A stretch of DNA of 64,000 nt from Ascidiella aspersa (taxonomy: Eukaryota): the NCBI GenBank assembly GCA_963924565.1, contig OZ004612.1, positions 12,524,001-12,588,000 on the forward strand, read 5' to 3'. Below are positions 1-20,641 of the stretch, piece after piece; positions within the stretch are counted from its first letter, which is position 1, and each line of letters opens with the position of its first letter. The notes under the pieces were generated by a model that did not search any database, was not told the DNA's origin, and was given only the letters and a program-made list of their open reading frames with translations. A program made the position numbers and the translations under genes.

Positions 1-1183
1 GTCGGCGCGCAAAAGCATTTTCCTGCAGAAGAACATTCTTTTAACCCTAATATTAATGTTTGCAAAAATCGGTAAGGTTGTAATATAAGACAAGGACGAA
101 TACTTTTATTTAAGGTGACTGTGCCCAAATTATTTGTTGAGTTTACCTGAAAAAAAAAACGCCATTTTTGCTGCCGTAATCTTTTACGTTGTAATCCAGT
201 TACCAAACAACAAAAAACAAACATAAGCAAAGTACAAAAAAAACAGTTTAAAATAAATCGATGAAAACCAATGATACGTTGCAGCTTTGCGCAGGTGTGG
301 CCAACCAGTTACCAGCAACAGTCGCATTTCCTATACTTTTTTCCTGTTAAAACTCAACGAGGCCCACCTTACACGTCGGAAATAAATATCATCTCCGCAA
401 TTGTAATGCTGAGCTAGACTAATTGGTAATGTTACACACTAATAATATTGAGTACATTAATATAACGCGAACTGTTGCTCACATTGTAGGCTTGTTAAAT
501 AATTGCCATCACGCCATAAAAAAGCTTTTGATTTTACTTCATAAAAGAGTGTCAGGATCTAAGTCAGAACCGGAAACCATTAGTAACTTAAGCAAAACAC
601 ATTTCACGCTGTTCTTTCTACAAACAAACTTAAAAACACCATGAATTTAAGAGCGGTATGAAGAGCTGAGCCGGGTCCGCAATCCTTGATAAAGCAACCA
701 CTTAAAACATGTCCGCAATATATATATTGTGTAAAATTCCTTGTTCGCGAGATCCGGGCCGGAGAGCGATGGTATAACGGCGACCGTCAGTTGAGTGGTC
801 TCACGATAGCGATTCATTTAAAATATGTCATTAGAGCGATTGCATAAATGGCGACAGCATTAAAAACAGCGACTGTTACGATATCAATTTACTGGCCGGT
901 CACAATGTGATAGGCTCACAAGGTCGTGTTTGTGTTACCTTTGTTAGATAAGTTAACTAGAGTGAATATCCTGATTGGTCGTTACATGTAAACTAAAGGG
1001 TTGGAAGTTTCTACCTTCGCTAGTGGATCAATTTTTATGTCTCTCGGTTCTATTTCTCCGTAAACCACTCTAGGCTTAGGATTAGAGCCCGAGCCCTTTT
1101 TAGCAGTGTCCTTAATTCTTGGCGTGATAAACAATATAAGAGTTAAGACAGTTATCAAAGACAAGTGAAGCATCCAACCCCAC

Positions 1184-1398
1184 CTGACTTTCTCCCTTGA
1201 TCCTTGCTTCTCTCCCTCGCGCAGGATCATGCGCACGATCTCGATGTTGCCCTCGGAGCAGGCGAAATGGAGTGACGTCATCTGGTCGTTGTCGCTGCTG
1301 TGGAGATCCGAGCCCTCGCGGATCAAACACTCGACGATGCTCTCGTGTCCGTGGGTGGCAGCCATGTGAAGAGCCGTCATTCCTTGCAGGTCAATACA
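1184..1398 (-). CDS. Ankyrin gene coding exon 6 (CIDLQGMTALHMAATHG...GSREKV)
   Basis: Acceptor ttcttctttcag at 1400-1399; two ankyrin repeats; donor AG|GTGGGG at 1183 (AAA|GTCAGG 5 nt earlier is an alternative). Confidence 0.88.
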
Positions 1399-4300: not shown

Positions 4301-6417
4301 ACAGCTTCCATCATGGATCGGAGCGTCACCTCCTCCCCGTCTCTCGCAAGCTGAAAAGAAAAAACGAGAGTTTAGGGAAATTTTGTGGGAAATAAGAGGA
4401 TATCGTCAAATATGTAAGGAGGATTTTAAACAGATCTTTTAATAATCAAGCCTTATAGTAAAACACAGAAAAGTGTTAACAAAATTTGTCCTTAAAAACA
4501 TCCGTTTCAGTTTTCTGTTTTCGCCCTGACCTAGAGTTTGAATGTGACATGTTATTGGCACAACAACACAAAAATGTATACAGAGATTCTTTATCTAAGA
4601 ACTCTCCAGGTTTGAAAAAATATAATTACAAAAAAATTGTATTTTAAAGAGATGCCTTGGCATGTTTGACTGTTAACAACAGTACATTTAACAGAAAAAT
4701 TAAGTAAACGGAACTATACCTGGTGAAGTGTAACCTTGAACACTCCCGATTGAATGGAAGTTTGCAAGTCCGAGTTGTTGAGGTACTCATCCCACTGGCT
4801 CTTCTTTCGCTGGGCTACCCGGGCGAAGTCGCTTGCGCCCCCCTCGCCGTCTGAAACCGGGCCCAGAGACTCCCCCATGGGAGGGAACTCGACCTTACGC
4901 TTTCGGACGCTTTTGTCCAGTAGCTTCCGATCCGGTCTCGAACCGCTGAAGCTCTCCTTCATGTTGCTTTGGTCTGGGCTGTTAAAGCGCGATAAGTCAA
5001 TGCAAAACGCTATACTTTTCAAACTTTCTTCAACATAAATAGATTATTTCACTTTCTAAGATACAGAGGTTGCCTCTATCGCTAATCAGGAAAAAGTTGT
5101 GCATGTCCTGTTAAAATCGTTGAACCTCAGCAGGTCTGCGGAGTCACACTCGGAACTCGACGGAGTCGGTTTGTTTTGTTGAAGTCGGACTCAAATGGTG
5201 GAATATTTTCCGTGTATTTTGGGTGGATCAGTTATATGGCACCTCCATAAGTGGATTGCTTAATATCCACCTTCGTTTTGTTACGTAAATGGTTAAAATG
5301 CTAGGTGTAGTCTCAGAGCCGGACTCGGGACTCGGCGAATTGCACATTTTAGCCGGAGTCGGACTCGGGTATTTTAAACCGACTCCGCAGCCATGAACCT
5401 CAGAAATTACGCTTTTTAACTGTTTCAGCAATTACTGATACCATTACCAAACAAATTACATTTATTAATATATACTCGGTTTATTTAAAATGTACATTCG
5501 CAAAACTGGAAGTATAGGGGTGCTGACCAAAGTTCGACGTTCACTCTTATGGGAAAGTGATTAGTTGCGCCTAAAAAGCACTTTTGGATAATATTAGGCA
5601 ATATTGATTGTTTGCAAGTATTTTTTAAATTAATTATTTACAATCCAAGCTGAAACAGCCATTGAGACATACTACTCAACGAATGTGCGTCCCATTGCAT
5701 TTCAATTTGCAATACTTAAACCAGGGGTGGACAACTTTTTAAACAGACCGGACAAATATCAGGTTCAGACCGAGAACCAAATGCATTTCTAATCTACCAA
5801 ATTCAACTTAAACGAAATTCTGGCAAGACAAAGTCCATTTTCCAGGTAGCCTAATTATTATTCAGCACTGATCGATCAAAGTATTTCGTGCATCTTTACA
5901 TATTTTAATAAAAAAGCTTACCAACGTACGTTAAAAACGCAAATTCTGCAGCCACGGGGCTGACAGGCCACATACTGGAGCAATTCTAATTTATCCACTA
6001 CTCATATTTTGTGCTTTATTCTTGCTATATATTGGCAGCTAAAAAGCTTGACCAAACGACTGTTTTTTTCACTTGTGTTATTTGAAAGGGCCAGAAACTA
6101 CTCTTCAAAGCATTCTGTGACAGATCTTAAACTAAAGCCTCTCGAGCCATATATTTTTTTCGATCTGCAGACCGCAGGTTGCAAGTCCCTGACTTGAACA
6201 ATGTGAACAAAAACTAAACTCACGTTGGTGTCTCGTAGTGGTGATAGACCGGGTCGTCTTCCGAGTTGAACTTCTTGTAGTTCTTGAGGGCCACGCTCTG
6301 CGGCGGATTGTCTTCGTGGCCAAGCCTCTTTTCCCACGGGTTCCACGGGGGCTTTTTGGCGCTGGCCCGGTTCGACCCATTACGGCGCCGCTCACTGCCA
6401 GAGCGGTCGTCCGACAT
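1184..6417 (-). CDS. TRPA1: Ankyrin-repeat protein, probably TRPA1-like channel N-terminus (5' part only, 6 coding exons; gene continues off the left edge)
   Basis: Exons 6417-6224, 4978-4720, 4350-4176, 2845-2724, 2141-1998 and 1398-1184 join in one frame. They encode a low-complexity N-terminus and tandem ankyrin repeats (TLHQLARDG, GITALHLAARHN, STPLHYAARY, GQTPLHCASIKGN, GMTALHMAATHG, QMTSLHFACSEGN). The ankyrin call is secure. TRPA identity rests on recalled motif pattern; the channel domain is not in the window. Confidence 0.62.
1998..2141 (-). CDS. Ankyrin gene coding exon 5 (IVIALLASNGAHVNLQDIEGQTPLHCASIKGN...GIAIE)
   Basis: 144 nt, phase 0-0; acceptor tttaaag, donor GAG|GTTTGG; ankyrin consensus. 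Confidence 0.88.
2196..2297. repeat. Intronic direct duplication of ~39 bp
   Basis: cacacttaaactataaaatggtacacaaagcagctgagg occurs twice, plus an extra internal ggtacacaaagcagc. Confidence 0.85.
2724..2845 (-). CDS. Ankyrin gene coding exon 4 (GVNAKTESRSTPLHYAARY...ASQDK)
   Basis: Acceptor ccaccag, donor AAG|GTACGG, phase 1-0; TPLHYAA motif. Confidence 0.85.
2981..3361. mobile_element. hAT-type MITE (degenerate)
   Basis: CAGTGGTTCCCA...TGGCAACCACTG termini, internal GGGTCGCGACCC motifs; TSD decayed. Confidence 0.7.
3736..4118. mobile_element. hAT-type MITE with perfect 8-bp TSD CTATAGAC
   Basis: TIR CAGTGCTGTTCAACC / GGTTGAAGAGCACTG; TSD on both sides. Confidence 0.9.
4176..4350 (-). CDS. 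Ankyrin gene coding exon 3 (LARDGEEVTLRSMMEAVP...GITALHLAARHNHYDTCKLLIEFGA)
   Basis: Not in the ORF track; read manually. Acceptor ttttcttttcag, 175 nt open, ankyrin repeat, ends at non-canonical GCAG|GCGAGT donor (phase 1). Confidence 0.88.
4720..4978 (-). CDS. Ankyrin gene coding exon 2 (PDQSNMKESFSGSR...KVTLHQ)
   Basis: Acceptor tttaacag (phase 2) and donor CAG|GTATAG (phase 0) both match neighbouring exons. Confidence 0.85.
5131..5395. mobile_element. hAT-type MITE (CGGAGTC subterminal-repeat family), TSD AACCTCAG
   Basis: CAGGTCTGCGGAGTC / GACTCCGCAGCCATG termini, many GGAGTCGG/GACTC repeats, perfect 8-bp TSD. Confidence 0.88.
5722..6003. mobile_element. Decayed hAT-type MITE
   Basis: CAGGGGTGGACAACTTTTT left end; weak right end; right boundary approximate. 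Confidence 0.45.
6224..6417 (-). CDS. Ankyrin gene first coding exon (MSDDRSGSERRRNG...YETPT)
   Basis: ATG in aaacaaaATG context, upstream acceptor gcatttag (exon starts 6454), donor AC|GTGAGT phase 2 matching exon 2. Confidence 0.8.
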
Positions 6418-6608
6418 TTTGTTTTGGTTAGTTTATGCTATTCTTCTCAATCAGCTAAATGCAGTTAAGAATGGAATAATCTGGTTTGATAATTTGTGCG
6501 AGAAAACGGTACCGTCATGTTGGCCTAATGTATCAATGGTCACAAACACAAACCGGTAGCTAATTTGACAAGTGGTAATCCAATAATTTAAATACAGTTA
6601 GGTAAACT

Positions 6609-6997
6609 CAATGGTTCTAAACCTTTTTTGGCTTACAGTACTCTGCAAACAACCAAAAGATTTGACGGCACCCACAGTCGAACTGAAAAAATTGTTTCTG
6701 TATTATATAAAAAAATAAATTTCAAGAGAGTTTTCGGACAAAACTAACTACAGCGCCGTATATTATCATGAATAATTTATTGAAGTTCATTTCATACAAA
6801 TTCAGTGCGAAATTTGTCCTTGAGTTTTAGCGCAAAGTCCTTTCAATGCTTGGGTGCACATTTGATAATGCTACTCCCATATCTTATTTAAAAGAAGTAA
6901 ACTTTCCCTTTTGTTTTTTTAATGATGGTCAAAAGGCACACTTGCGAAACGTAAATGGAACCCTAAGCTGCCGCGGCATCCCGGTTGAGAACTACTG
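6609..6997. mobile_element. hAT-type MITE (degenerate)
   Basis: CAATGGTTCTAAACC / GGTTGAGAACTACTG termini with GCGGCA(T/C)CC subterminal motif. Confidence 0.7.
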
Positions 6998-9585
6998 AAT
7001 TAACTGTTTATTTTGGTATTTTTTCGTTGACGTTTTTAAAAATATTCTTCCAATAATATTAACTTTTATGATATTTTTCAATAGTCCAAGGACACTCCTC
7101 CAACATCTTAGTTTTTTGCAGAACTGTTATAAACCCTGTCTTCCTTTTTCGGGACTTGAACGTGTGAAGCACCCCTGACTTAAAACAAAACGTTCAACAC
7201 CAGGTATAACTTACTTTTCACAAGTGAGCAGGATGCCAAATACAGTGGTAGATATTCCACGTCAATCCTTTGCTACCTTTATTTTAGGCTGAAACTGGAA
7301 CAAGAATAGCCTATTTGTAACACTCTACGCTTGAAAGAACTTGGAAGCGTGCCAGATTTTGCCGAATTAGCCCGATACATAGTAAGCAGGCAAAACGCAA
7401 CCTGTAAAAACATTGAGTTGTCGCAATCATTGTTTTGTCGCTGTGACTTATAAATCAAAACAACAAAAGTGCCCAGTCATGTCCGTTCTAAGCCAGGTGT
7501 GCTGTTTTCTTTAATCGATAATTAATTGATCAAAGGCCTTACAAATTTACATATTGAATGAACACAGCGTTGGTAAAACAACATTGTAATTGTTTGTTTA
7601 AGTAAAGTCCTTATTAATTTAATACTGCTGCGAAAAATATGATTCGATTTCAAACTATGCACGGCTTTTGCAAAGAAAAAGTAGCCTAATTTTTTCATGG
7701 ATACTTTTAACTTAGTATTATGTAAAAACAAACAATATCTCATTCTCGTCAAATTTATGTTTTTCTCAAACTCGTCATGACTATTGTTTTGACATCACGT
7801 GGTTTAAAGTAAAAACACATATTGAGCGAAGTTCGAACGTTACAGTAGGCCTACCTATATAATAGCATAATGACTACTGAGAGTCGACAAATTCACTTTA
7901 TGGCTTCGCATTTTACTATCGGTTTTGTTATAGTTTAAAAGCTTTACAAATTCTCAACTTGAGTCTGCTAATTTTTGATAAGATGCCTGTCGAAACATCG
8001 CAACGGCGAAATGGCCATTAATTCCACCAATTTAACATCATTTGACAGATCTGAAAAAGTGTATTGTATCTATACAATAAAATAAATTAATTCACAGCTT
8101 TCGACTGGCGTTCTACGCGGTGACGATAAATAGTAGTGGCCATTAACGATAAACATGTAGCTTACAGGTGTTCATTAGTTGCCAGGGAACGGTGGGATAT
8201 AATGAGTTGGCGCCTAGTTACAGGTGAGTATGGCCTTTTGCGCTGCGCAAATGTTCGCTACAGGTATGTGGCTTTATATTTATAAGTATATGTTACATAC
8301 ACAGTTCGTCATGCGTTCACGTTTGCGATACGACGCGTCATGCAATCTGAACATCACTGTTCGACGTTCGTACTTTATGGTTGGGAAATGCATGTCATTT
8401 GGATGATGCGATGTATATTACGAATAGCATTTATGGAACTTAACACAACAAACTGTTCGACTGATAAATGTAGACAAACTGATGGGTCGAAAAAAAACTA
8501 CCTTAGATTGCCACCTATAAATTAACAATTCTCTAATTCCCATCAGTTCCGGTGTTAACATGTCCCATTTAAGCGTGCGTTTTTCAAGCGTGTTACTCGC
8601 GTTTAGGTTGTAGCAACCTTTTCACGTTCGAGAGAGGTCGGTGCTTTAACCTCAAAGCGATTATTATGCGACAACCGAAGAACAGGTCAGCAAAAACTTC
8701 CATGGCAGATTTTGTAGGAGCAGGTTTTGTAATTTTGCATCGCCTACTGATTCACAGATGCTTGTTTATCGCCCAACAAACACGTTTTGCTCAAGGCTAT
8801 CTTGTTGCCTCAATATGCCTATTTGGCTGCCCACGCTCCTCTCAATCACGCCTTGAAAACATACGAGAGCCAATGTCTGTTCATCTGGCAAAGTACGTCG
8901 CCCATACGACCCAGCAACGTATACGTGGGTAGATAACATTTATAAGGCTTCAAATGACGTTATACTAAAGAGGTTTCTAGATTAAGAAAAAGTATATTTT
9001 ATTGTTTTCTAAGTCAGTTTGCCATTATTGGTTCCGGTTTCAGTCGGAAACAATGAGATTATCTTAAGTATAAAGTAGGTTGTTATATCTTTTATTAGTG
9101 AAAAACAAAGTTTCACACTGTAATAACCAACAAAAAACGTTTTTTTTTAATTAACCAAGTGGTGATCATGAAATTCCGTTCAAAATTGTCTGTCTAAACT
9201 GTAAGATTCATTTCCAAGTCTTACTTCTTTAGTTTAAACTGGTGTTCGTAAGTTTAGCTAACATTTTGGTAGTTCAGATATGAAGAGGAATTATTTTATG
9301 TCAAACGGAAGGACACAACATCTTTATGCATAAAAATATTTTAAAAACATTCAAAGAAACGAAGAGCTTTATGGTATTCACAGTTTTTTAGGGCCTGCCA
9401 TGTTATTTAAATACATATACGTTCTCCAACTGAATAGGGAATAACCACTTACCGAAACTGATGCCTGTCAAAGCATAAAGCGTTTACTATTTATTTCGTG
9501 TGTTTTTTTAGATTTTAAACAACATGAGCAGATCTATGTTTTTAGCGTCCTATATTGTTGATATATTTTGCTGTTGTCTTTTCAG

Positions 9586-9607
9586 CATCATCATGGCTTC
9601 GTGGGGG
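9586..9607 (+). CDS. Candidate alternative start micro-exon of the plakin-repeat gene (ATG 9593, MASWG)
   Basis: Strong acceptor ttttgctgttgtcttttcag, catcATGG Kozak context, donor GGG|GTAAAC phase 0, compatible with the 13244 exon. Confidence 0.3.
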
Positions 9608-12064
9608 GTAAACACCTGACAAGGTTCTCAGCATTGCGAGCCAGGCGACGTCTGATTAGAGTTAATTGTTTTCTTTTGCGGTCGACGACACCTCATGGCC
9701 TTGTTTAAAGTCGCCGGGCCGGTTCGATTTAATTGGCCTAAGGGCGCTCGAAAAGTCGTCCAGGCGAGTGAAACGATGGCGCCTTGCGCATCAGCTGATT
9801 AACACATCATTACTGTTTTAATATCGCTTCAGTTCCAGGCAGTAAAGCTGTAAAATCGTTTTGTCGAAAGGTTGTATGACTATATGCGAATTTGGAGACT
9901 TTTTTCTTACGTAAAACCATGAAAGTGTGTGTCGCAGGAGAAGTAATGGTTTGAAATATGTGGCAACCAAATATATGAGGTTTGATATCGCAATTGGTTT
10001 ATGGAAAACAATATATGATTACTAAAATATTATTTTTTAAATAATGCATAAAAAGTCACCAGTCGTTATAAACAGTCGCCAGCGAAAGTATTAGAAAATA
10101 TCTGATAAAGGAATCTTTGTCGATTTACCTTCCCATATTTAACTTAAATATTAAAAATCCACTATAGAAAGTGTCTTTGATGTTAAACGAAATCGCCCAG
10201 TGGTCTTTCAAATCGATTTTACGCATGATGATCTGAACTGTTTTACGTAAGATGACTTGACTTTGTTTTAACTGCACGACGATCTCTCAAAAACCCACAC
10301 TGATAACACCGACCCCTGTTATTTATTGTTTCTGTTTGTTGCTTGTCAGAAATAGAAGTGATGAAGGGCCGTTTCAAACTCGATAAATAAACTGTCGAGG
10401 GCTGTTAGCTGGTGCGCAAATCATCTAAGAGTTGCGAAACGAGGTAAAATCGTTTTTGACGTGTCGCCAACAATCGTTTGTGACTAAATCTTTTACGAAA
10501 AGTTTTGTTTTGATATACTGCTGTTTAAGTGCTGCTGCCAAGTAGGCCATCAATAAAGTGACCTTTATTGTGTAGTAAAGCATCTCGGATACTTCCGAGT
10601 AAAATGCTTCAGAAACTGTTTCAGTCGTATAGAATTGCAAAGCGTGAACGCATTTATCTAGGCCAGATCTCTGGTGAAATAAACAAATTTAGTTGAACAT
10701 AGGATAACACACGTGCTGACTGTTTTTACTGATCCTAATAGAGTATTTCAGTTTGTATTGAGATTGCGGTGAAGTGAGTTTGCCAAGTCTCAACTTATCA
10801 TTTTGTTGTTTCGTTACAAAGCCGGACGTGTATTCCCCATAATGACCACTGAGTGGAACGAATAATGAACACTGAGTGGAATTACCGTAAGACCCGCAGT
10901 TACGTGTAATTAGTTACTGGTCGCACGTAGAAAACCACCATTTACCGAAACGGAGCTGTTTGACGATAGGTTCAGCTGCATTTAACCTCGTGATTACATG
11001 CTATCATATCGTAGCACATTTCGTAGCCTTAAAACATTGAGAACTTGATAGTGGGAGGTAATCATAGGCTGAATCATGATGGTTGTTCGATTTTCCTTAC
11101 CGAACTGCTGGTTAGAGAATGATTGTAGAGAAGAGACTATACTGAGTGAAATGCTGAATAGCACACTTTTTTATGAATATTGACTTGCACAACTGTATAG
11201 GAAAGCGATTATAAGAACTTGGATTTTAAAAGGTGGCAAATTTCTGTTATATACAGAGACAGGCTTTTTGCGCAGTGTGAAAATGCATAGATGAAGATTA
11301 TAGAAAAATAATATCAAAAATGAGGATTATTAATAGCTACTAGGTGTTAAAAAATTTCGAGTTTGATGATATATACTCGGTTTTCGCAAAGGCTTGTTAG
11401 GGTATTTCAGGATTCCTTACTTTCTGACTCCTGTTAGAAATTAATACGATAAAAACCTTGATATACAGCGAATTACAGGTTTCAGCTGGACGATGCCATG
11501 ATGCAGTCACTAAATTGCATGAAATAATGCTTTGCAGAGTGGGAGAAATTGGTCGACAAGTAGAAAAGATCCACTTGTTAGACGCTGTCCCATAACATTT
11601 TACATTTGCCCTGTTGTAAAATTATAACAGGCGAAATGTTTCTTTACTATAGCAAGAAAAAAAAGTTCTACTACTTACACAATATACTTTAAGTTACCAT
11701 GCCGTTTGTGTGTTTTTGAGTTGTTAGATATTGAATATAAGTAAAAAGTGTGTTTGTTGAGGACATTGACAGGTGTTTATTGCGATTCTCGTCAATACTT
11801 ATAAATGGTCAGACAAGACACACTTTGCAGAATGTATCCTTCCTTAATTTGGAAATAATGATAATATTTTTGTGCTTTACAGGTCGCTTAAGGTTAAGTT
11901 TTCCCGAAAAACGATAACTTTCATGCTGAAATATGCATTCTGCCTGACTGAAAGATTACATTAGTTCAGTCGCTTAAGGCTAAAAGTGTCCGATCGGAAT
12001 CTTGCAAACTGCAAAAACTGTTTTGAGATATAAAACAAATCGAGGCAACGAAAAGCCTCCCAAG

Positions 12065-12176
12065 ATGGCCATCGCAATGTCGCCAGGAATTCTGGCCGCC
12101 GTTGTAATTCTTTCCGTGGAGCTTGTGGTTATCATCACTGTCATTGCCTACCTTCTGTGGCGAAGTCATCACATGC
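12065..12176 (+). CDS. Plakin-repeat gene exon 1: N-terminal transmembrane/signal-anchor helix
   Basis: MAIAMSPGILAAVVILSVELVVIITVIAYLLWRSHHM; ~24 mostly hydrophobic residues; donor C|GTAAGA phase 1. Confidence 0.7.
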
Positions 12177-15100
12177 GTAAGAAAAAAAACACTTTTTGTT
12201 TTTAGTAAACGATAATTGGCTTTGGCAATGGTTAATGTGTCGAAAATTGCCGTTCTAGTGCAGTGGTTCTTAACTTTTGGCAACCTGTCGAACCCCTATA
12301 TCATTCTGCAAGCTTTCGTTGAACCCCTACTTTTCGCTCAGTATTCGTTTCTTCCTCCTAGCAGCTGAAACTGGGCATATTCGAATTATAAACTTGCATT
12401 TATCTAGGTTAAATTGGCCAAACTTTCAATTAATAACGTTACATGACACCTTGGCATTTAAAGGAGATTCGAAGTTAGCTTGAAATAACAGCATTTATAT
12501 TTCAGAGGACGTTCTCACCGAACCCTTAAAATAGCTGTGTCGAACCCCAAGGGTTCGGCGAACTCTGGTCAAGGACCACTGTTCTAGTGTTTTAATTGTA
12601 CCGCAACTGTTAAACAATTCCTAATTCATAACTCAAAAGTTCTTTCTATAAAATATGCGGCATTATGTAACGAATAAACGTAGTGTTATGTTTATGGAAG
12701 AAACTATATTGAACAATGTAGGTATTAGTTATAAAGGGGGGAATGGCGGTTCTGAAATCTGAACTGTAATATGCCAAAAGGAGATTGCCATAATGGGCGG
12801 GGGCGCAGTGGCAAAGTTTACGACCTTTAAAATTACAGGCGGTGCTGCCATTGTTTGACGATACAAACAATTGCTGTAATGACAACTTAACAGCGCAAAA
12901 CCTTTCGTTTGGGGAAGGGAGGAGTTTTGAAGTGATAGAACACCTCGCGGACGAAACAAAAAAAAATACATTTATCTTTAAACGTTATTTTTCTTTAAAC
13001 GTCAAATCTGTTCATCAAAGAAAATCGGTCGCTAACAAATTTGCATTTTTATTTAAATATTATTTTAACGTCCATTTCACCAAGAGTTTTAACATCAGGA
13101 AGAGTAGGTTAATTTGTGTACTGAATGTTGGATTGAACATTCAATCAATTGTATAACAAAATATGTTTTGTTTTATACAATACACTTTTTACCTGTAAGC
13201 CTATCCTAAGATTTTTTGTGACGTTATATTTGGTTTCTCACAGGTAGTTATTTATTTTAAAACTGTTTTTGACTACTTGAAATCAACTCGGATATCGAAA
13301 ACGGAAAACAGTTCGTTTCTTTGTGGAAAGATAATAATCCCACAGCAGCAGAAGGTAAAAAATCCTTCACAAAGTTAGAGCCATTATTTCCATTAGGCCG
13401 GATCATGACTTCAGCAGTAACATGACAGCAGAAAATACGATTGTGACGTCTATAAACAATTCAGCGTTTGGGTTTCATAAATCCTCTGTGGAGGTGCTTT
13501 TTGACCAATGAGATAACAATGTGAACGCGAACGTGTCTAATTGTCAGCTACACGGCAGTTCTCAACGTAATTATGACGTTTTCTCCCACCCCCACCTCAT
13601 TTTAGTTAAACTGACTTGAGCCAGTAGCCCGATACAAACGTTCTCTGTTACAAATTGTTATTTACGTCACATTAAAACCTTCGCAAAATACTGCTGTTTG
13701 AAATAAAACGTTGTATACTTTGCTAATGTTTGTACCCACATGTCTATTGACAATACCAGCTTGAGCTTGCTTTGCTTATGTTTTGTAATAGGAATGGCGA
13801 TTAAATGTTTAAAACTGTAAGTAGACCATATTTATACAAATAAACTGATGATAAAACAGAACCCGTTGTCCATCAGTAATGCATATTTGTCAATTTCAAA
13901 TATATAAAAACCGCTGTCATTTGTCCAATTAATAAAACTAAATTAAAATACAATAACTTGTTCTAGTTATACCTGTAAGGCTGTAACATGTCCCAGATTG
14001 CTGCAAAAAACTTCTATTAGTTTGGATTAATTATTGAATCCTAAAATTGTGTTGTGGCGACACTTAGCGGAATCGTATTTACTTAAGTTAAAACTATGAA
14101 AAAATTCTCAAACGATATAATGTGTTCAATTGGCCTAGGCTTCTGGAAGTGTCGCTTGTGCATGAAAACTGTACATTCAGGTTCACTTAAGGATCGGAGG
14201 TTATCGAACTCGCAATCTCTATTGCGATTGCACATAGTTAGATCTGATGTACGCGATTATAGATTGCAGAACGCCCGAGGCGTCTGAAAATAAATTGCTG
14301 GACGACCTCTGTCAATACAAATCGCCAGCCGGGCAGAAGGTTTGTATTTCAATTCTTATTAAATTTTTACTCGACTTTCGACCAACAGTCATTGCATCTT
14401 TAAAAACAATCACTAAGTGCGCATTAAGTATACGTTTGCAGAACATGTTATTAAAAAAGGGATTTTAAGGCGATTTGTGTAGTAGAAGAGTGATTTTTAA
14501 GCCGACCCAAGTTTTCTGCTATTTCTAATTTAGGGTATAGGTATAGATAGGAACAATTTTTCTGAAGTCAAGGACATCGTTTACCTAGTGAAAGGTCACT
14601 AAACAAATATAGGAAGACAAGGTGTTGAAAAGTGTACATTATATCAGGCTAAATTCAAGTGGTTACATGAGTTTTATGCTTTTAAAATATTTTCACAGAA
14701 ATACTGCTGTAAATGGAATTAGTAGCGTATAAGGAGATGTAGCTATATGATCTTGTTTACGTTTTGCATTAGTTGAGGTGTAACAATGTACGTTTCTATA
14801 CCAGCTAAATATGTCGCAACTTTATCTTAAAAAATGATTTAGTGGTAAGTTTTAGTCAGGAAAATGGGTTTTGAAACTCACCAGACATATGAGCTACGAC
14901 TGGTCTTTTTTTTTTGCTGCTTTGTCGCTCTACTTAAAACGTTAAATTATTGTACAGCAATCCCATTCAACGCAAAAAGGTGTTTGAGCTGTTTGATGCT
15001 AGAACCGAATTAAAAACTCTTGATGAGAGAGAGAGCGGTCAAAGGCCACTCCTTAAAAATGATATGAATTCTGCGCCGAATCGTAACCAGAAGAAACAGG

Positions 15101-18100
15101 ATTGGCGCAATGACTTGTACAACGCTATGAAAAGGAGCCTAGAAGAGGGTCCTCTCACTGGGGCCTTGACCGAGAAGACTGGCGACGTCGTCTCACGGAC
15201 CCTCGTATCTCTAGTGGATGCCACCGTCGAACAGAGCCTAAAGAACTTGAAGAGGCAGAATCGCGCCGAGGTACGCGAAAAGGCTCAGCTCCATCGCGAT
15301 ATCAGGCTTCTTGAGGAAAAGAACGAAAAGAGCGCCAGAAAAATACGACAGCTGGAAAAGAGACAGAAAGCCCAATTCAAAAAAGGTCGAAACATTTACT
15401 TGCCAAATGCGAGTTAATTTTCTTTCGACAAAGTTCTTCCTAAAGTTTAGGGCTTTTGCTACACGCAGATTTTGAACGGCAAGGGTACACTAGTATGCTT
15501 TATAAGCGAATCACGTTTTATCCGAATTGTGTGTGTGTTTTTTTACATATTGTGAAATTCCCTTAACGCGTCAAAATTATCTTATGTAAGATGCTCAAGG
15601 CTCATGCCTAAAACTGTTCAAAATACTGAACAGGATATCGACAACTGAGACATCATTGGTTAACAGACAGAATTGTATTGTAGCGGCCTTGAATAATACT
15701 TGGTTGTTTTTAGGTGGCGCAAATAACAAAAGCGAAATACCGACTGGAACCTATGAAGCAAAAGAAACTGTTACAGTGCCACGTGAGTAGGATTTACTTT
15801 TAGTTGATTTGCAAATAGTATAGCCACAATGCCAGGTAGCTGTTTAATTTAACTAAATTGTTTTGGTTATTTGACTAGATGAGCAAATGTAACAAGTGAG
15901 CCTAATGTGAATATTGTTTTTAAACAGCGATAAATAACGTCGTCATCGAGAACGAAACCAAAAAAGAAGAAGAGCCTGAAGTGGAAAAGCCGGTAAGTAT
16001 AGTGGTTCGTGTTAAATAACAGCAAATTCATAGTTGCACATCGATACAATTCATTACTTGTATAATGTTTATAACTTAAACGTTTGACATTAGCAAAGGC
16101 TACCTAGAATCCCCTAGAATCCCGAAACATGCAAACCAAAGCACGGTCTAAACTGAACCCAAAAATAGCTTTAATTCATAAACCGGAAACAATTGTCTAA
16201 AATATAATATTGCTTTGCAAGCTGGTTGTATAATTGGGTCAGATTAGTATCCATTAGTATAAATCAGAGACATGAAAACACCTGGTTGTCATTTCACGTT
16301 AATCTTGGCAGTGAATTTCCGCACAAAGTTAAGGCTGAATATCTGCGATATCCATTGCGTATTAAATAAAAGTGGAAAAACAACGCAAAAAGTATAATTC
16401 TATTTGCTTTCCTTTCTGACATTGTGTTTTTCTCATTTTAAGGTCCCAGCTCCTAGAGCATCTTCAAGCCCTCCTTCTGAATGCGAAAAGGAGACATCAT
16501 CTTCCGAATCCGAGTCCTCGTCGGAAGAGGAGGAAAGCTCCGAAGAAGAACCGGAACTTAACGAAATACAAGAGGAAGTCCAAGAAAAAGAATCCTCCTC
16601 AGAATCAGAACAAGAAAGGGTCGAGGAAGATAAAACTAAAGAGCCAATTGTAGAAAAAGAGGAGGAAGTCTCTGTCATGGAGGCACCATCTTCTCCTGTG
16701 ATTTCAAGGCATCCAAGTACGTCCTCCAGCAGTTCGTCCTCCAACGATCCCAGTTCTTCTTCTTCTGAAACTGATGAAGAACGAAAGAGCGATGATGTGG
16801 TGATTGAAGTTGATCCCGAAGCTGAAAAGGAAACAAGTGATTTCGAGGTGGAAAAACCCCAAGAGGTCTTGATTCCAGTCGAATCACCTCCGACAAGTTT
16901 AGGTAAGTTCGAGTTTTCCCAACTTCATTTTTAACTCAATTTGTTAAATTGCACGTCACTAATTACTCAAGTTAGAGGTTAGTAGTTCCTAAAATTACGA
17001 ATACCAAAAGCTATTTTCTCAAAATAATTAGTCATTAAAATTGTCGTGATTAGATTCTTATTATTTTAAATAGCTGCCTACACTACAGCATCTCTTTGCA
17101 ACAGGAAATAAAAACTTATTATTGCAGGAATAACTTCTTAACGGTACATACAATACGATTTACTAACTCAGTACTGGACGAGGACACGCACAAAGAAGTT
17201 CCAGTCAAGTCAGTTGTTCAAATAAATCAATTATAGAACTAACAAGTCAGTGAGGCAAACGAACGCATGGGGGTATCTTGATTGTTTTTAGAAAAGCACT
17301 GCAATGAACTTCAAAATACACGTCCTGGCAATAATAAATTTAGCACAGGCGTTCCTTAACTGAAGTCCATTCACCCCTTGAGGGTATGTGGACTCGTTTT
17401 GGCAATCAATGAGTCATAATTTAAACCTTATAGTTTTAAATAAATTTATTTTTCAAGAGGCTAACTGAAAAAACGTTTTGACCCTCCTTCAATATATTTT
17501 GGCTCGATTTTAGTGTATAATTGCACACGTTTGACCTAAAACTGCAGGTTTCTACTTGTTTTTACACCATCCTTGAACAATTGCATGCCGACCCTGGTCC
17601 AGGCAAACTATTTTTCAGTTGTCCTCGTTGAATAGTTTAAGAAACCCTGATCCAGCAAATAAGGCATTTTGGCGAGCCGATACTTTATTTATACAATAGG
17701 GCCAAATCTCAAAGATTCAACGCTTTACGTCCAAAATTTAGGCCTAAATTTGAGCTGTCAGTGCAAACGCTATTTAATTCAAAAAATGAGCAAAATTAAA
17801 TACACAGAGCGAGTGTCTTCTTCGTCTTCCCGAGTCCGCTCCATCGACGTCGGAGGAGGCATCACTCTGTCGCTTCGCATCCAGCGCGGATCCGACAACG
17901 CCCACAAAGTCATCCTTAACGGAAGATCTCTGGGAGGCGACGGAGAGTGCACATCATCATCAGAAGATGGGTCGGACGAGCCTCTGAGGAGCTTCTCGCA
18001 TAACCAGACTCAGGATGACGGCATCAAGGTGATCCGGAGGTACGACGTGCCGGAAGAGAACTCCGAAAGCTATTTTGCTGCTCCACCCAAGGTATTGTAA

Positions 18101-20641
18101 TACCGTCGAGTGTTTTTACGAACAATATAATTTATTTAGACTATATAAATTATGTATATGACTATCTTGTTTGAATAGTAAAGTTTCACCTTGTGGTATG
18201 CTCTAAATCACTGTAACCTTCGACCTTTTTGAGATTTTCAAAAACTCCTTATGTTCAAAAATGACATTTAAAGCAAATTAAAGTTCTTCTATTGGATGGC
18301 TCCTATAAAATAAAAAAACGAGTGCTTACGCAATCTGGCCGGTATCTTAAATCACGATTATTTTTTAACTACACTATTGCTGGCTATAACGTATTTGCAA
18401 AAAGCCAAAAAAATAAACGTTTACCTATGTTACCAGCTTCAACTAGTCTTGCTTCATTCTTTCCGCACAAATTCGTGCAAGCATACTCCTGGCATTTCCA
18501 ACGGCTAACGCAACTCTTATCGTTTGCAGCCTATCGGTTTCCGGCCGTCCTCCCTACCCTCCGATGACGAGTCCGACGAGCTCGTGACGTCAGATGAGGC
18601 GGTGGCCGGTGTCATCAACGTGACGTCAGGCGAGAAGCTCACGATCTGCCAGGCGACGAAGAAGGGCCTGATCCCGAAGAAGACGGCGCTCTTCCTGCTG
18701 GAGGCGCAGGCTGCAACCGGGAGCGTAGTGAACCCACGCAACGGCGTTAAGCTTTCGGTGCAGGGCGCAATAGACCTCGGCCTTGTCGACGAGCACTATA
18801 GGCAGACGCTGATAGCTGCAGAAGGCGCTTACTACGGCTACCTGGACCCACGCACCAACGAGACGGTTTGCCTGAGCGAGGCCATGCGGAGGGGAATCTT
18901 CCCCAAAGCGCAAGGCATGCGGCTGCTGGAATCCCAGGTGGCCACTGGCGGCGTTATTGACCCGTGGACCGGCGCCAGGTACGCGCTGGACGCCGCACAG
19001 CAGAAGGGTTTGGTCGACGACGAGATGGCCCAAGCGCTGAAGACGCCCGACGAGCTGATGGATTTCTTCGATCCCGGCACGCAGTCGAAGCTGAGCTACG
19101 GCGACCTGCTGGCCAAGTGTATTCGCGACCTGGACACTGGCCTGCGCTTCCTCTACATCGAGGAGAAGCCGCGCGCTATCGACACGCACTACCAGCCCGA
19201 TTTGCTCACTTTCCGGAGCGCTTTTAGACGCAAAGTCACGCTACAGGACCTGATCGACGCCGGCCTAGTTGAGCGCCCGATTTTGGACGCGTTTCGCGGA
19301 GGGAGGCTGAGCAAAGAAGAGCTTCGCGACGTCCTGCAGCCATTCCTGGTCGGCGAGGAGCCAATCGCTGGAGTGCTGAACAAGGCGACGCACAAGGTGC
19401 TGAGCATCTGTCAGGCGGTTAAAGACGGCTTGTTGCGCAAAGGCACTGCTCTTGAGCTCCTCGAAGCCCAGGCGGCCACCGGAAGCATAATCGACCCTGC
19501 ATCCGGGAAGAAGATGTCCGTAAATCGTGCAGTCAGCATCGGCTTGGTGGACCAGGAGTTTGCAGCCGCCCTACAAAACGCAGAGCAGGCTGTTCATGGC
19601 TTCACTGAGCCTGGAACCAATAAGCTCATATCGCTATTCGAGGCAATGAAGAAGGGCATCGTGATCGAGATTCACGGAGTCCGGATGTTGGAGGCGCAGC
19701 TCGCCACCGGAGGAGTGATTGATCCTGAAGCGGGCTACCGCATCCCAACGTCTCTTGCCCTGGAGCGCGGACTCTTCGACTACAGAATGGCTGACATTCT
19801 TACGACGTCCAACGCAGATTTAAAGGGCTACTACGACCCTACCAGTGGTGAGAAATTGTTTTAAGATTGTTGACAGAAAATTCGGCAAACTGTTTATATA
19901 AGTAACAGCGAAAGGACGCATCTCGATTTTTTCACAAAAAAATACAATTTCGGATTTAAACGAAGAACCTAAAATTGAAAAAAGGATGTAGGAAAGTATA
20001 AAAATGGTCTTAATTTGATTCTAGTAAGCATTTCTTATAATTGTAAAATTACTCTTTCGGCGAAATTTTATTAAGGTGCCAACGTTTCAATTACCTATTC
20101 GGTCAATCGCGTTCAGGGCAATATAGCATTTCCTAATTTGATTCTAATATGACGTTTAGCAAATGCACTCAAGACAAGCTATTCTTCTATAACGGTCCTC
20201 GAGAAGATGCTTTGTAAGCAATCAGACGGCATCCTTCCGATTCAGGCCTTACACTTTGTGTCTCAAAACTGTACCTCTAACGTTAAAAAATCGCAGCCAA
20301 AACGACTTTTAGAGTAGTTTTACGTTGCCGAGGCTGAGCAAAATGGTTACTATGTTGCAGGCGAGAACACGACCTACGCGGAGCTAATGAAGCGCTGCGT
20401 CAGAAACAAGAAGCGTCACGGAGGAGGAATGCGTCTTCTCCCGATCGTCGATCGCGCTCCCACCACCGACCTGAAGCTGAAGGGCACCTTCCGTCATCGC
20501 AAGATCACCATCACCGACCCGCTCACCAACCGCCAGATGACGCTAGACCAGGCGGCATCGGCAAACGTCATTGACCCGGAAACTTTGCAGACGCTATCGC
20601 TACAGGAAGGCGTTTGGCCCGACGACGCCCGTCGCACTTGA
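12065..20641 (+). CDS. Membrane-anchored plakin-repeat (desmoplakin-tail-like) protein, ~1028 aa, 9 exons
   Basis: Exons 12065-12176, 14270-14339, 14958-15385, 15714-15782, 15928-15992, 16443-16902, 17808-18091, 18530-19847 and 20361-20641 all have GT-AG borders, matching phases, and sum to 3087 nt with one terminal TGA. The plakin repeats are unmistakable (LLEAQAATG, IAGV, GGVIDP). Linkage of the TM exon is inferred from phase. Confidence 0.75.
12261..12581. mobile_element. hAT-type MITE with perfect TSD TTCTAGTG
   Basis: CAGTGGTTCTTAAC / GTCAAGGACCACTG, CGAACCC subterminal repeats, 8-bp TSD. Confidence 0.9.
13244..13354 (+). CDS. Candidate alternative exon (phase 0-0: VVIYFKTVFDYLKSTRISKTENSSFLCGKIIIPQQQK)
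   Basis: Acceptor tttctcacag, donor AAG|GTAAAA, 111 nt, open only in phase 0, no ATG. Confidence 0.4.
14270..14339 (+). CDS. Plakin-repeat gene exon 2 (QRPRRLKINCWTTSVNTNRQPGR)
   Basis: Acceptor attgcag (phase 1); alternative acceptor attatag at 14263 (phase 0, same frame); donor AG|GTTTGT phase 2 fits the next exon. Confidence 0.62.
14958..15385 (+). CDS. Plakin-repeat gene exon 3, includes short coiled coil (EQSLKNLKRQNRAEVREKAQLHRDIRLLEEKNEKSARKIRQLEKRQK)
   Basis: Acceptor tgtacag, donor AAAG|GTCGAA, inside the 155-aa ORF; heptad-like charged helix. Confidence 0.8.
15714..15782 (+). CDS. Plakin-repeat gene exon 4 (GGANNKSEIPTGTYEAKETVTVP)
   Basis: Acceptor gtttttag, donor C|GTGAGT, 69 nt, phase 1-1. 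Confidence 0.78.
15928..15992 (+). CDS. Plakin-repeat gene exon 5 (PINNVVIENETKKEEEPEVEKP)
   Basis: Acceptor tttttaaacag, donor CCG|GTAAGT, phase 1-0. Confidence 0.8.
16443..16902 (+). CDS. Plakin-repeat gene exon 6, Ser/Glu-rich disordered linker
   Basis: Acceptor cattttaag, donor TTAG|GTAAGT, phase 0-1; acidic low-complexity ORF. Confidence 0.85.
17346..17649. mobile_element. hAT-type MITE (degenerate)
   Basis: CAGGCGTTCCTTAACT / AGTTTAAGAAACCCTG; TSD atttagca/atccagca. Confidence 0.7.
17808..18091 (+). CDS. Plakin-repeat gene exon 7 (ERVSSSSSRVRSIDVGGG...YFAAPPK)
   Basis: Acceptor tacacag (NAGNAG), donor AAG|GTATTG, phase 1-0; GC-rich codon usage. Confidence 0.82.
18530..19847 (+). CDS. 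Plakin-repeat gene exon 8: plakin repeat domains A and most of B
   Basis: Two internally similar ~190-aa blocks (AVAGVINVTSGEKLTICQATKKGLI..LLEAQAATG / PIAGVLNKATHKVLSICQAVKDGLL..LLEAQAATG); acceptor tttgcag, donor G|GTGAGA. Confidence 0.95.
20361..20641 (+). CDS. Plakin-repeat gene last exon: end of PRD-B plus first half of plakin linker, stop
   Basis: Acceptor gttgcag phase 1 gives DPTSG-ENTTYAELMKRC; then FRHRKITITDPLTNRQMTLDQA..LQEGVW; TGA 20639-20641. Confidence 0.9.

What the first reader, a model, noticed from the sequence alone, without database searches (positions are those of the whole stretch)
12065..20641. Single-pass membrane protein fused directly to a desmoplakin-type intermediate-filament-binding tail
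Seen: nine GT-AG exons form one 1028-aa frame. It runs N-terminal hydrophobic helix, basic RSHHMQRPRRLK, ~50-aa coiled coil, Ser/Glu-rich linker, two plakin repeat domains, half linker. No CH/actin-binding, plakin, spectrin or long rod domain is visible. Established: PRDs and the linker are the IF-binding modules of desmoplakin and plectin. Those proteins reach membranes through desmosomal cadherins/armadillo proteins or integrins, and desmosomal cadherins are vertebrate-specific. The plakin isoforms I know with N-terminal membrane anchors (plectin 1b, dystonin-a2) keep their ABD and plakin domains. Inference: by the positive-inside rule the PRDs face the cytoplasm. This could be a one-molecule IF-to-membrane or IF-to-organelle tether, a 'minimal desmosome' architecture I do not recognise.
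Basis: partly seen in the sequence, partly recalled or inferred. Interest (0 to 1): 0.85.

Follow-up and report, generated by a model that had tools for sequence, protein, structure and literature searches.

The report
Membrane-anchored plakin-repeat protein, sea squirt
A sea-squirt gene joins a membrane-spanning helix to the filament-binding tail of desmoplakin-type proteins, other sea squirts keep the same design, and no searched paper describes it, so it may be a one-protein way to tie intermediate filaments to a membrane in animals without desmosomes.

Summary
Nine GT-AG exons (12065-20641, + strand) give one 1028-codon frame: a hydrophobic N-terminus, a basic stretch, a helical region, an acidic Ser/Glu linker, two plakin repeat domains and the first half of a plakin linker. 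No CH or spectrin exon was detected nearby.

The transmembrane exon is real. It is 72-73% identical in protein to the first exon of orthologues, with third-position changes, and conservation stops at the ATG and at the donor. Ciona (XP_002120044.1) and Styela models, and a transcript-like contig, start with it.

The reading needs three corrections.
- The Ciona protein runs from the membrane-helix sequence straight into E4-like sequence. The Phallusia and Clavelina models start in the helical exon and have no helix. The two N-termini are therefore probably alternative, and the 1028-aa form is unproven.
- Binding to intermediate filaments is inferred only. The key groove residues of envoplakin (K1901, R1914) are not basic here.
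- This is one of at least four membrane-anchored plakin-repeat genes in this genome. This scan had already noted two others on other DNA.

I found no paper describing the architecture. RNA reads could not be obtained.

The parts
12065..12176 (+). E1: start codon plus an N-terminal signal-anchor transmembrane helix (about G8-W32, with Glu19 inside it), followed by RSHHM. Ends in phase 1 at a GTAAGA donor.
   Evidence: Hydropathy maximum 3.04 and GC 0.51 against 0.35 in the flanks. It is unique in the window. Protein identity is 26/35 to L007:1293-1397, with nucleotide differences 8/4/17 by codon position and flank identity of only 41% and 31%. It is 27/37 identical to the N-terminus of Ciona XP_002120044.1 and 19/33 to Styela.
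14270..14339 (+). E2: 70 nt encoding (Q)RPRRLKINCWTTSVNTNRQPGR(S). It is the only exon that can bring E1 into the frame of E3. No comparison supports it.
   Evidence: AG/GT sites, correct phase and GC 0.53. No homologue was found in L007 or in any orthologue protein.
14958..15385 (+). E3: basic helical region (net charge +12) with a predicted 70-residue helix. With E2 it forms a 498-nt, frame-neutral cassette. It probably belongs to a TM-less isoform.
   Evidence: AlphaFold2 helices. It is 48% identical to residues 9-111 of the Phallusia protein P0237 (E 1e-21) and 35% identical to Clavelina P0236 (E 7e-12). Both of those proteins start here without a TM. It has no paralogue in this genome.
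15714..15782 (+). E4: 69 nt, phase 1 in and phase 1 out, encoding GANNKSEIPTGTYEAKETVTVP. Both E1 and E3 can join it in frame.
   Evidence: Sequence and splice sites. Phallusia has PRNKSEIPSGTYG after its KKG. Ciona has R-GTNKGHDIPTSNEG directly after its TM. The E1-to-E4 junction codon CGT encodes Arg.
15928..15992 (+). E5: 65 nt encoding INNVVIENETKKEEEPEVEKP. It restores phase 0.
   Evidence: Splice sites and phase. The resemblance to Phallusia CVIESET... was judged by eye only.
16443..16902 (+). E6: acidic Ser/Glu-rich linker of 153 residues, net charge -35, with 44 Ser+Thr.
   Evidence: Weak collinear homologue at L007:6937-7359 (E 5e-8).
17808..18091 (+). E7: linker exon carrying two motifs specific to this orthogroup, GGITLSLRI and GIKVIRRYD.
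   Evidence: tblastn to Phallusia (59%), Clavelina, Styela and L007:8522-8743. No Pfam family matched.
18530..19847 (+). E8: two plakin repeat domains, desmoplakin PRD-A-like and PRD-B-like.
   Evidence: Pfam Plectin E 4e-80. PDB 5dzz E 2e-98. Orthologues are 58-83% identical and share the exon ends.
20361..20641 (+). E9: end of PRD-B, the RHRK basic motif, the first (PR2-like) lobe of the plakin linker, and a TGA stop.
   Evidence: The position of the E8/E9 junction is confirmed by the spliced orthologue P0235, which reads SG|GNLTY where ours reads SG|ENTTY.
9570..9800 (+). GC-rich island 2.3 kb upstream of E1. It is the site of the alternative first exon (ATG at 9593) that scan note s1-802501 proposed for a TM-less isoform. 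It is uncertain.
   Evidence: GC 0.47-0.57 and sequence. There is no comparative or RNA evidence.

Best explanation
The locus is a member of a tunicate-specific orthogroup of plakin-repeat proteins. Its first coding exon is a conserved N-terminal signal-anchor helix.

In the membrane-bound isoform about 7 residues lie outside or in a lumen. A 25-residue helix with an invariant intramembrane Glu crosses the bilayer. The basic juxtamembrane residues and everything after them face the cytoplasm: a long acidic, Ser-rich and probably phosphorylated tether, two desmoplakin A/B-type plakin repeat domains, and the first lobe of a plakin linker.

The most likely function is to hold a PRD ligand at a membrane. 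Intermediate filaments are the default ligand, and the genome has IF genes. This would work without an actin-binding domain, plakin domain, rod, armadillo adaptor or cadherin.

The helical cassette E2-E3 is most likely the N-terminus of a second, soluble isoform. The gene would then switch one tail between a membrane-bound form (about 862 aa, E1 joined to E4) and a free form (about 932 aa, starting at the Met in E3).

Shown: the exon structure, the PRD and linker homology, the conservation of the TM exon, and the orthologue architectures. Inferred: the topology, the isoform choice in this species, IF binding, and the target membrane.

My odds:
- A TM-anchored isoform is made here: about 0.88.
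- A TM-less isoform also exists: about 0.7.
- The TM isoform contains E2-E3: about 0.3.
- The ligand is IF: about 0.55.
For: Gene model. PRDs and linker.

E1 is coding and under purifying selection. It is 26/35 identical to L007:1293-1397, which lies on the same strand 8.7 kb upstream of the 74%-identical PRD exon. Ten codon differences are synonymous and 9 are conservative replacements, with nucleotide differences of 8/4/17 by codon position. Identity is 72% in the exon against 41% and 31% in the flanks. The donor is in phase 1 in both species.

Full-length orthologues begin with the same helix: Ciona P0238, Styela P0239/P0240, and P0241 (948 aa on a 3381-nt contig, so probably spliced RNA). 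All have only Plectin repeats as a Pfam domain among those scanned. The sister protein P0031 (710 aa on a 2446-nt contig) also starts with a Glu-bearing TM.

Paralogues in this genome have the same layout. The first exon of the mini-plakin is also 112 nt and phase 1 (L002:3780-3891). The PDZ type also ends in phase 1.

Alternative N-termini: Ciona reads TM-R-GTNKGHDIP, which matches E1 joined to E4. Phallusia P0237 and Clavelina P0236 start in E3-like sequence without a TM. E1 and E3 both end in phase 1 and E4 starts in phase 1.

IF genes are present in the genome.
Against: The nearest annotated relative, Phallusia (79% identical in E8), has only a TM-less model. The Ciona and Styela models are automatic predictions.

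E2 has no comparative support. E3 was not found in the L007 species.

Against IF binding: the equivalents of envoplakin K1901 and R1914 are G99/T112 in PRD1 and Q/L in PRD2. The non-basic motifs AAEGAYYGY and AEQAV recur in the orthologues checked. Both PRDs have a net charge of -2. The second linker lobe, which carries R1713/K1714, is absent.

Topology rests on hydropathy and the positive-inside rule only. No TM predictor was available.
Confidence: 0.62

Rival explanations
1. All nine exons are joined in one mRNA. The protein is TM + basic stretch + helical/coiled-coil region + acidic linker + PRD-PRD-half linker (1028 aa), and the helix dimerises the anchored protein.
For: All nine exons are frame-compatible, with GT-AG sites and no stop. 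The part of E3 upstream of its first Met is open, is predicted helical, and holds several out-of-frame ATGs that would suit a 5' UTR poorly. Clavelina also codes through this region. Styela isoform X3 shows that a cassette can sit between the TM and the linker.
Against: No orthologue model combines the TM with the E3-like region. Ciona, Styela X2 and P0241 go from the TM to the linker. Phallusia and Clavelina X1 have the E3-like region without a TM. E2, the only bridge, is not conserved anywhere. The Styela cassette shows no significant similarity to E3.
Confidence: 0.3
2. In this species the TM exon is not used with the PRD exons. Only a Phallusia-like soluble protein is made, and E1 is a relic or belongs to a separate short transcript.
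For: The closest annotated relative (Phallusia P0237) lacks the TM. There is no RNA evidence here.
Against: E1 is intact. It has a good Kozak context, a canonical phase-1 donor, coding-type substitutions and 73% identity to the Ciona N-terminus. A relic would not keep these. The Phallusia model may be 5'-incomplete or may be only one isoform.
Confidence: 0.08
3. The protein is membrane-anchored, but its PRDs do not bind intermediate filaments. They hold another ligand, as suggested for the poorly basic PRD-A class, or they act as a spacer or scaffold.
For: The equivalents of K1901 and R1914 are non-basic in both PRDs, and the non-basic motifs recur in the orthologues checked. Both PRDs have a net charge of -2. 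Fogl et al. 2016 (PMC4782060) state that PRD-A modules have few basic groove residues and may have undiscovered functions. Only one lobe of the linker groove is present.
Against: The R1876 equivalent is Lys in both PRDs. The RHRK motif corresponds by position to plectin RKRR 4274-4277 and periplakin R1655/R1656, which are needed for IF co-localisation (PMC7035337). This correspondence is by position in the linker, not by a residue-level alignment to plectin. Every tested PRD-plus-linker tail so far binds IFs (established knowledge). The genome encodes several IF proteins.
Confidence: 0.35
4. The N-terminal hydrophobic stretch is a cleaved signal peptide, so the PRDs are lumenal or secreted.
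For: It lies at the extreme N-terminus.
Against: The hydrophobic core is about 25 residues, while signal peptides have 7-15. There is no small-residue cleavage motif after it. The positive charges (+5) all follow the helix and none precede it. PRDs are known only as cytoplasmic modules (established knowledge).
Confidence: 0.03

Closest known systems
Desmoplakin C-terminal tail (PRD-A, PRD-B, linker, PRD-C; PDB 5dzz, 1lm7)
   Same: E8-E9 are collinear with PRD-A, PRD-B and the first lobe of the linker (E 2e-98 and 4e-16). The basic motif at the start of the linker is kept.
   Different: No plakin domain, rod, second linker lobe, PRD-C or Gly-Ser-Arg tail. An N-terminal TM helix takes the place of the plakoglobin/plakophilin-binding head. 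In the tree the orthogroup lies outside the vertebrate desmoplakin/plectin/epiplakin clade.
Plectin isoform 1b and dystonin/BPAG1-a2 (plakins with an N-terminal membrane-targeting sequence)
   Same: A first-exon-encoded N-terminal anchor chosen by alternative 5' exons. The same gene also gives non-anchored isoforms. This comparison rests on established knowledge and was not tested here.
   Different: Those isoforms keep the actin-binding domain, plakin domain and rod. Here nothing but a linker lies between the anchor and the PRDs.
Other tunicate TM-PRD genes: Ciona 'plectin-like isoform X2' (P0124), Ciona LOC100182972 and Styela 'plectin-like' mini-plakins (P0090, P0091), Clavelina SP+TM+PDZ+PRD (P0071), Oikopleura P0114
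   Same: An N-terminal TM followed by a basic cluster, an acidic linker and PRD(s), with Plectin repeats as the only Pfam domain. The first exon ends in phase 1. An intramembrane Glu is shared with P0114, P0163 and P0031.
   Different: They are paralogues, not orthologues. P0124 is 45% identical, and its orthologue lies at C1:7.744-7.759 Mb. Only this orthogroup has the E3 helical cassette and the GITLSLRI / IKVIRRYD motifs. This orthogroup also lacks the basic K1901-equivalent residue that the paralogues keep (AERAV).
Epiplakin
   Same: A plakin made of PRDs with no actin-binding domain, plakin domain or rod.
   Different: Epiplakin is soluble, has 13 PRDs, and is restricted to jawed vertebrates. 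PMC8782857 found no Ciona homologue.
Nesprin-3 with plectin; integrin beta-4/BP180 with plectin/BP230
   Same: The functional outcome is the same: a membrane protein coupled to IFs.
   Different: Those systems need two or more proteins, and the TM partner has no PRD. Here the anchor and the PRDs are in one polypeptide. The analogy is inferred only.

Membership tests
Plakin-repeat (PRD) proteins | At least one plakin repeat domain (4.5 plectin repeats) | tested here: met
   Pfam PF00681: 7 repeats in E8 (E 4e-80) and 2 in E9. Collinear match to desmoplakin PRD-A/B, E 2e-98.
Canonical plakins (desmoplakin, plectin, BPAG1, MACF1, envoplakin, periplakin) | Plakin domain (spectrin repeats with an SH3 insert) and/or an actin-binding CH pair at the N-terminus | tested here: not met
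   No CH or spectrin match within megabases on C6, with the caveat that only the best candidates were scored. Full-length orthologues and paralogues have Plectin repeats as their only Pfam domain. The SH3_10 search was uninformative.
Canonical plakins | Long coiled-coil rod for dimerisation | tested here: not met
   Only a predicted 70-residue helix in E3. It is absent from the TM-bearing orthologues.
Desmoplakin orthologue | A PRD-A, PRD-B, full linker, PRD-C tail, and clustering with vertebrate desmoplakins | tested here: not met
   The protein ends after the first linker lobe. In the tree it falls outside the vertebrate clade, which has 95/93 support.
Tunicate membrane-anchored PRD proteins (undescribed set, noted earlier in this scan) | N-terminal TM helix followed by a basic cluster, encoded by the first coding exon | tested here: met
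   E1 properties. Conserved in L007, Ciona, Styela and P0241.
Tunicate membrane-anchored PRD proteins | TM and PRDs present on the same mRNA in this species | not testable with these tools
Only orthologue models and transcript-like contigs support the junction.
IF-binding PRD/linker modules | Basic groove residues (envoplakin R1876, R1895, K1901, R1914) | tested here: not met
   Only the R1876 equivalent is basic. The equivalents of K1901 and R1914 are G/T in PRD1 and Q/L in PRD2. The PRD2 equivalences were read by eye through PRD1.
IF-binding PRD/linker modules | Linker basic motif (plectin RKRR 4274-4277; periplakin R1655/R1656) and a bi-lobed groove | tested here: inconclusive
   RHRK and the conserved Trp are present. 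The second lobe, with R1713/K1714, is missing. The RHRK correspondence is by position only.

The most novel reading that the evidence does not exclude
Tunicates, the sister group of vertebrates, lack desmosomal cadherins. They may anchor intermediate filaments through a family of single-pass 'TM-plakin' proteins that need no plaque adaptors. In this reading the invariant intramembrane Glu drives assembly inside the bilayer, either as self-oligomers that replace the plakin rod or by pairing with a basic residue in an adhesion receptor. Alternative first exons would switch the same filament-binding tail between a membrane-bound and a soluble state. This would be a third, previously unknown design of IF-membrane junction beside desmosomes and hemidesmosomes.
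Probability: 0.22. Interest if true: 0.85.

Novelty: new variant of a known kind. Interest (0 to 1): 0.66.

Why it matters
How invertebrate chordates fasten their keratin-like filaments to membranes is not known. Desmosomes are regarded as a vertebrate invention. In every described system PRDs reach membranes through adaptor proteins.

A conserved gene family would offer a simple, testable alternative. Ciona, Styela, Oikopleura and this genome each hold one or more members, and this genome has at least four. In these genes a membrane helix is fused directly to PRDs. The family also bears on how the desmoplakin/plectin tail was used before desmosomes existed.

Ciona orthologues exist (XP_002120044.1). 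Localisation, knock-down and IF-binding tests are therefore ordinary experiments in an established model.

The finding also has a practical side. These proteins are labelled 'plectin-like' in databases, which hides their architecture.

Tried and rejected
1. My first gene model had 7 exons and 981 aa, with E3 joined to an acceptor at 16450. It is frame-compatible but wrong. Homology to Phallusia and Ciona revealed E4 and E5 and the phase-0 acceptor at 16443.

2. The search of protein representatives with E3 returned 0 hits. I first read this as 'E3 is lineage-specific'. Later hits showed E3-like regions in Phallusia and Clavelina, so that blank was misleading.

4. The search for E2, E3 and E4 homologues in L007/L008 found nothing significant. 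I found no exon phasing for that species that links E1 to the acidic exon through its strong acceptor, so its structure stays unresolved.

5. The Styela X3 cassette compared with E3 showed no significant similarity.

6. The ESM Atlas search on E3 gave scores of 0.85 or less, which is uninformative.

7. The SH3_10 search rang nowhere, not even in the controls.

8. The TM exon of the C1 orthologue of Ciona P0124 was not found in L005/L006.

9. I considered a mitochondrial outer-membrane anchor of the plectin-1b type and thought it less likely. The helix is long and very hydrophobic. This was not tested.

10. The joined spliced protein was never searched, folded or written out. All searches were exon by exon, by reference.
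Full report
**Place and organism.** The window is G000:C6:12524001-12588000 of a 308.6-Mb, 75-contig assembly. Earlier notes of this scan call it a sea squirt. The protein comparisons agree. The best named relatives of the gene are ascidian proteins. Phallusia mammillata is closest, at 79% identity over the PRD exon. The genome is not Styela clava or Clavelina (61% and 52% to their orthologues of a paralogue).

**The observation.** Nine exons on the + strand form one frame of 3087 nt, which is 1028 codons plus TGA:
- E1 12065-12176
- E2 14270-14339
- E3 14958-15385
- E4 15714-15782
- E5 15928-15992
- E6 16443-16902
- E7 17808-18091
- E8 18530-19847
- E9 20361-20641

Every junction is GT-AG and no exon has a stop. 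My first model had only seven exons, because E3 can also be joined in frame to an acceptor at 16450. Exon GC was 0.46-0.60 for the seven exons measured, against 0.32-0.36 in introns.

The parts are as described.
- E1 gives a 37-residue N-terminus with a 25-residue hydrophobic core. Its Kyte-Doolittle 19-mer maximum is 3.04, and a Glu sits in the middle.
- RSHHM and, through E2, QRPRRLK follow it.
- E3 is predicted as helices 2-25, 42-63 and 72-141, the last with pLDDT above 90.
- E6 is an acidic Ser/Glu stretch with net charge -35.
- E8 holds seven Pfam Plectin repeats (E 4e-80) and aligns collinearly with desmoplakin PRD-A/B (PDB 5dzz, E 2e-98).
- E9 completes PRD-B and continues through RHRK and one PR-like lobe. 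It stops right after the Trp that ends the first lobe of the plakin linker (E 4e-16 to a desmoplakin-like protein; linker anatomy from PMC7035337).

No CH or spectrin exon lies near. An ankyrin-repeat gene on the opposite strand lies about 10 kb upstream.

**Is the membrane exon real?** Four lines of evidence say yes.
- Chance: in the whole window, on both strands, there are only 26 ATG...GTRAG open frames of 25-80 codons. The only one with TM-grade hydropathy is E1.
- Conservation: a JGI metagenome contig from a related tunicate (L007) carries a PRD exon 74% identical to E8. On the same strand, 8.7 kb upstream, it has a homologue of E1 with 26/35 identical residues (tblastn E 1.3e-15).
- Substitution pattern: the nucleotide differences fall 8/4/17 on codon positions 1/2/3. 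Ten codons differ synonymously, and the nine replacements are all conservative, mostly swaps between hydrophobic residues. Identity is 72% inside the exon and 41% and 31% in the flanks, starting at the ATG and ending at the donor. The donor is in phase 1 in both species. In a tblastx of 12 kb against that contig, E1 is the best-conserved element after the PRD exon.
- Collinearity: E6, E7 and E9 homologues follow in order.

**Do relatives keep the fusion?** The length limit of the protein search hid full-length proteins at first. A spliced orthologue fragment was then found: P0235, 603 aa on a 2032-nt JGI contig. It lacks the in-frame intron seen in the genomic P0008, which confirms the position of the E8/E9 junction. 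Using it as the query reached the full-length orthologues.
- Ciona intestinalis 'plectin-like' XP_002120044.1 (829 aa) begins with a helix 27/37 identical to E1.
- Styela clava LOC120331173 X2/X3 (901 and 968 aa) and P0241 (948 aa on a 3381-nt contig, so probably RNA-derived) also start with this helix.
- The sister protein P0031 (710 aa on a 2446-nt contig) does too.
- Of these, Pfam was run on P0031 and on the paralogues P0124, P0114, P0163, P0090, P0091 and P0071. It finds only Plectin repeats in them.

The membrane-helix-to-PRD fusion is therefore a conserved property of the orthogroup.

**The correction.** Not all orthologue models have the helix. Phallusia A0A6F9DPM9 (930 aa) and Clavelina LOC143462073 X1 (985 aa) begin inside sequence homologous to E3 (48% and 35% identity, E 1e-21 and 7e-12) and have no TM.

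Conversely, the Ciona protein reads ...LLWKNH-R-GTNKGHDIPTS. This is our E1 followed directly by E4 (GANNKSEIPTG). In our locus the E1-to-E4 junction codon is C|GT, which also gives Arg.

E1 and E3 both end in phase 1, E4 opens in phase 1, and E2+E3 total 498 nt. Three products are therefore possible:
- E1 joined to E4: anchored, about 862 aa, Ciona type.
- A TM-less form starting at or before E3: about 932 aa from the Met at 15062, Phallusia type.

E2 is the only bridge from E1 to E3, and it has no comparative support. I therefore rate the two N-termini as probably alternative. This agrees in outline with the other first-stage note on this window (s1-802501). Its specific first exon at 9593 could not be tested. 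Only a GC-rich island is seen there.

The joined protein was not searched or folded.

**Family context.** The genome has five PRD loci.
- One is a canonical spectraplakin with a CH exon upstream (C4:3.68-3.74 Mb).
- Three besides ours are membrane-anchored. They are the orthologue of Ciona 'plectin-like X2' P0124 (C1:7.744-7.759 Mb; TM + acidic linker + PRD-PRD-half linker); an SP+TM+PDZ+PRD gene next to it (L004:1404-1578 is its first exon); and a TM + single-PRD 'mini-plakin' on C6:10.774-10.779 Mb. The mini-plakin's first exon is, like ours, 112 nt and phase 1.
- The scan had already noted two of these on other DNA (s1-788683 with a follow-up, and s1-806514).

In a tree of the PRD pair, our orthogroup plus P0031 forms a clade (99/97). 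It is separate from the Ciona P0124/Oikopleura clade and from vertebrate desmoplakin, plectin and epiplakin (95/93).

A Glu at the same depth of the helix, 13-14 residues before the first cytosolic basic residue in most of them, is invariant in all eight TM sequences aligned. These come from at least two, probably three, paralogous lineages.

**How it probably works.** All positive charges follow the helix and none precede it, and the hydrophobic core is long. This is the pattern of an N-out/C-in signal anchor (inference; no predictor was available). The tail would then hang in the cytoplasm on a tether of about 300 acidic, Ser-rich residues.

PRD plus linker is the IF-binding unit of plakins (PMC4782060, PMC7035337), and this genome has several IF genes. 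An IF-to-membrane tether is therefore the default reading.

It is not secure.
- The groove residues shown to matter in envoplakin, K1901 and R1914, correspond to Gly/Thr in PRD1 and Gln/Leu in PRD2. The non-basic motifs recur in the orthologues checked. The PRD2 equivalences were read by eye.
- Both PRDs have a net charge of -2.
- Only the first linker lobe, with its RHRK motif, is present.

I put IF binding at about 0.55. The conserved intramembrane Glu suggests assembly within the membrane, either with itself or with a partner. That is speculation.

**Novelty.** Searches of 8.4 million papers found no description of membrane-anchored PRD proteins. The terms covered plakin repeat, tunicate/Ciona/ascidian, transmembrane, and the accession numbers. 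One Ciona paper mentions a plectin/desmoplakin/epiplakin homologue only as a marker (PMC7397655). The architecture is thus present in databases as automatic 'plectin-like' predictions, but no paper found here describes it. I file it as a new variant of a known kind.

Noticed in passing
window 17808-18091 (E7): Two short motifs, GGITLSLRI and GIKVIRRYD, are kept in every orthologue seen (Ciona, Styela, Clavelina, Phallusia, L007, P0241). They are absent from the paralogues and match no Pfam family. They could form a small fold or a partner-binding site.
   Followed up: partly
window 12119-12121 (Glu19 of E1); P0114, P0163, P0031, P0238, P0239, P0241, L007:1347-1349: A Glu at the same depth in the membrane helix is invariant in eight TM-PRD proteins from at least two, probably three, paralogous lineages. 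This suggests an interaction within the bilayer.
   Followed up: partly
window 9570-9800: A GC-rich island (0.47-0.57) lies 2.3 kb upstream of E1. It contains the short ATG exon that scan note s1-802501 proposed as the first exon of a TM-less isoform. No comparative or RNA evidence could be had.
   Followed up: partly
window 982-2264 (- strand): Ankyrin-repeat exons of a neighbouring gene on the opposite strand (Pfam Ank, E 5e-14 and 1e-8).
   Followed up: partly
G000:C1:7743799-7768551 (L003-L006): Two membrane-anchored PRD genes lie in tandem. One is the orthologue of Ciona 'plectin-like X2'. The other is an SP+TM+PDZ+PRD gene whose first exon is at L004:1404-1578. The TM exon of the first gene was not located.
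   Followed up: partly
window 14959-15384 (E3), tool behaviour: The search of 1.84 billion protein representatives returned no hit for E3. Yet Phallusia and Clavelina proteins with a clearly homologous region (E 1e-21 and 7e-12 by tblastn) are present in the other protein database. A blank from that tool can mislead.
   Followed up: yes
L007:1790-1993 and 6363-6769: Related open frames (...LLGALLKAENLHTAVAIG..., ...THCNCYWAPFKSRV...) recur inside the long intron of the orthologous gene in the metagenome contig. They are probably a repeat or a mobile element.
   Followed up: no
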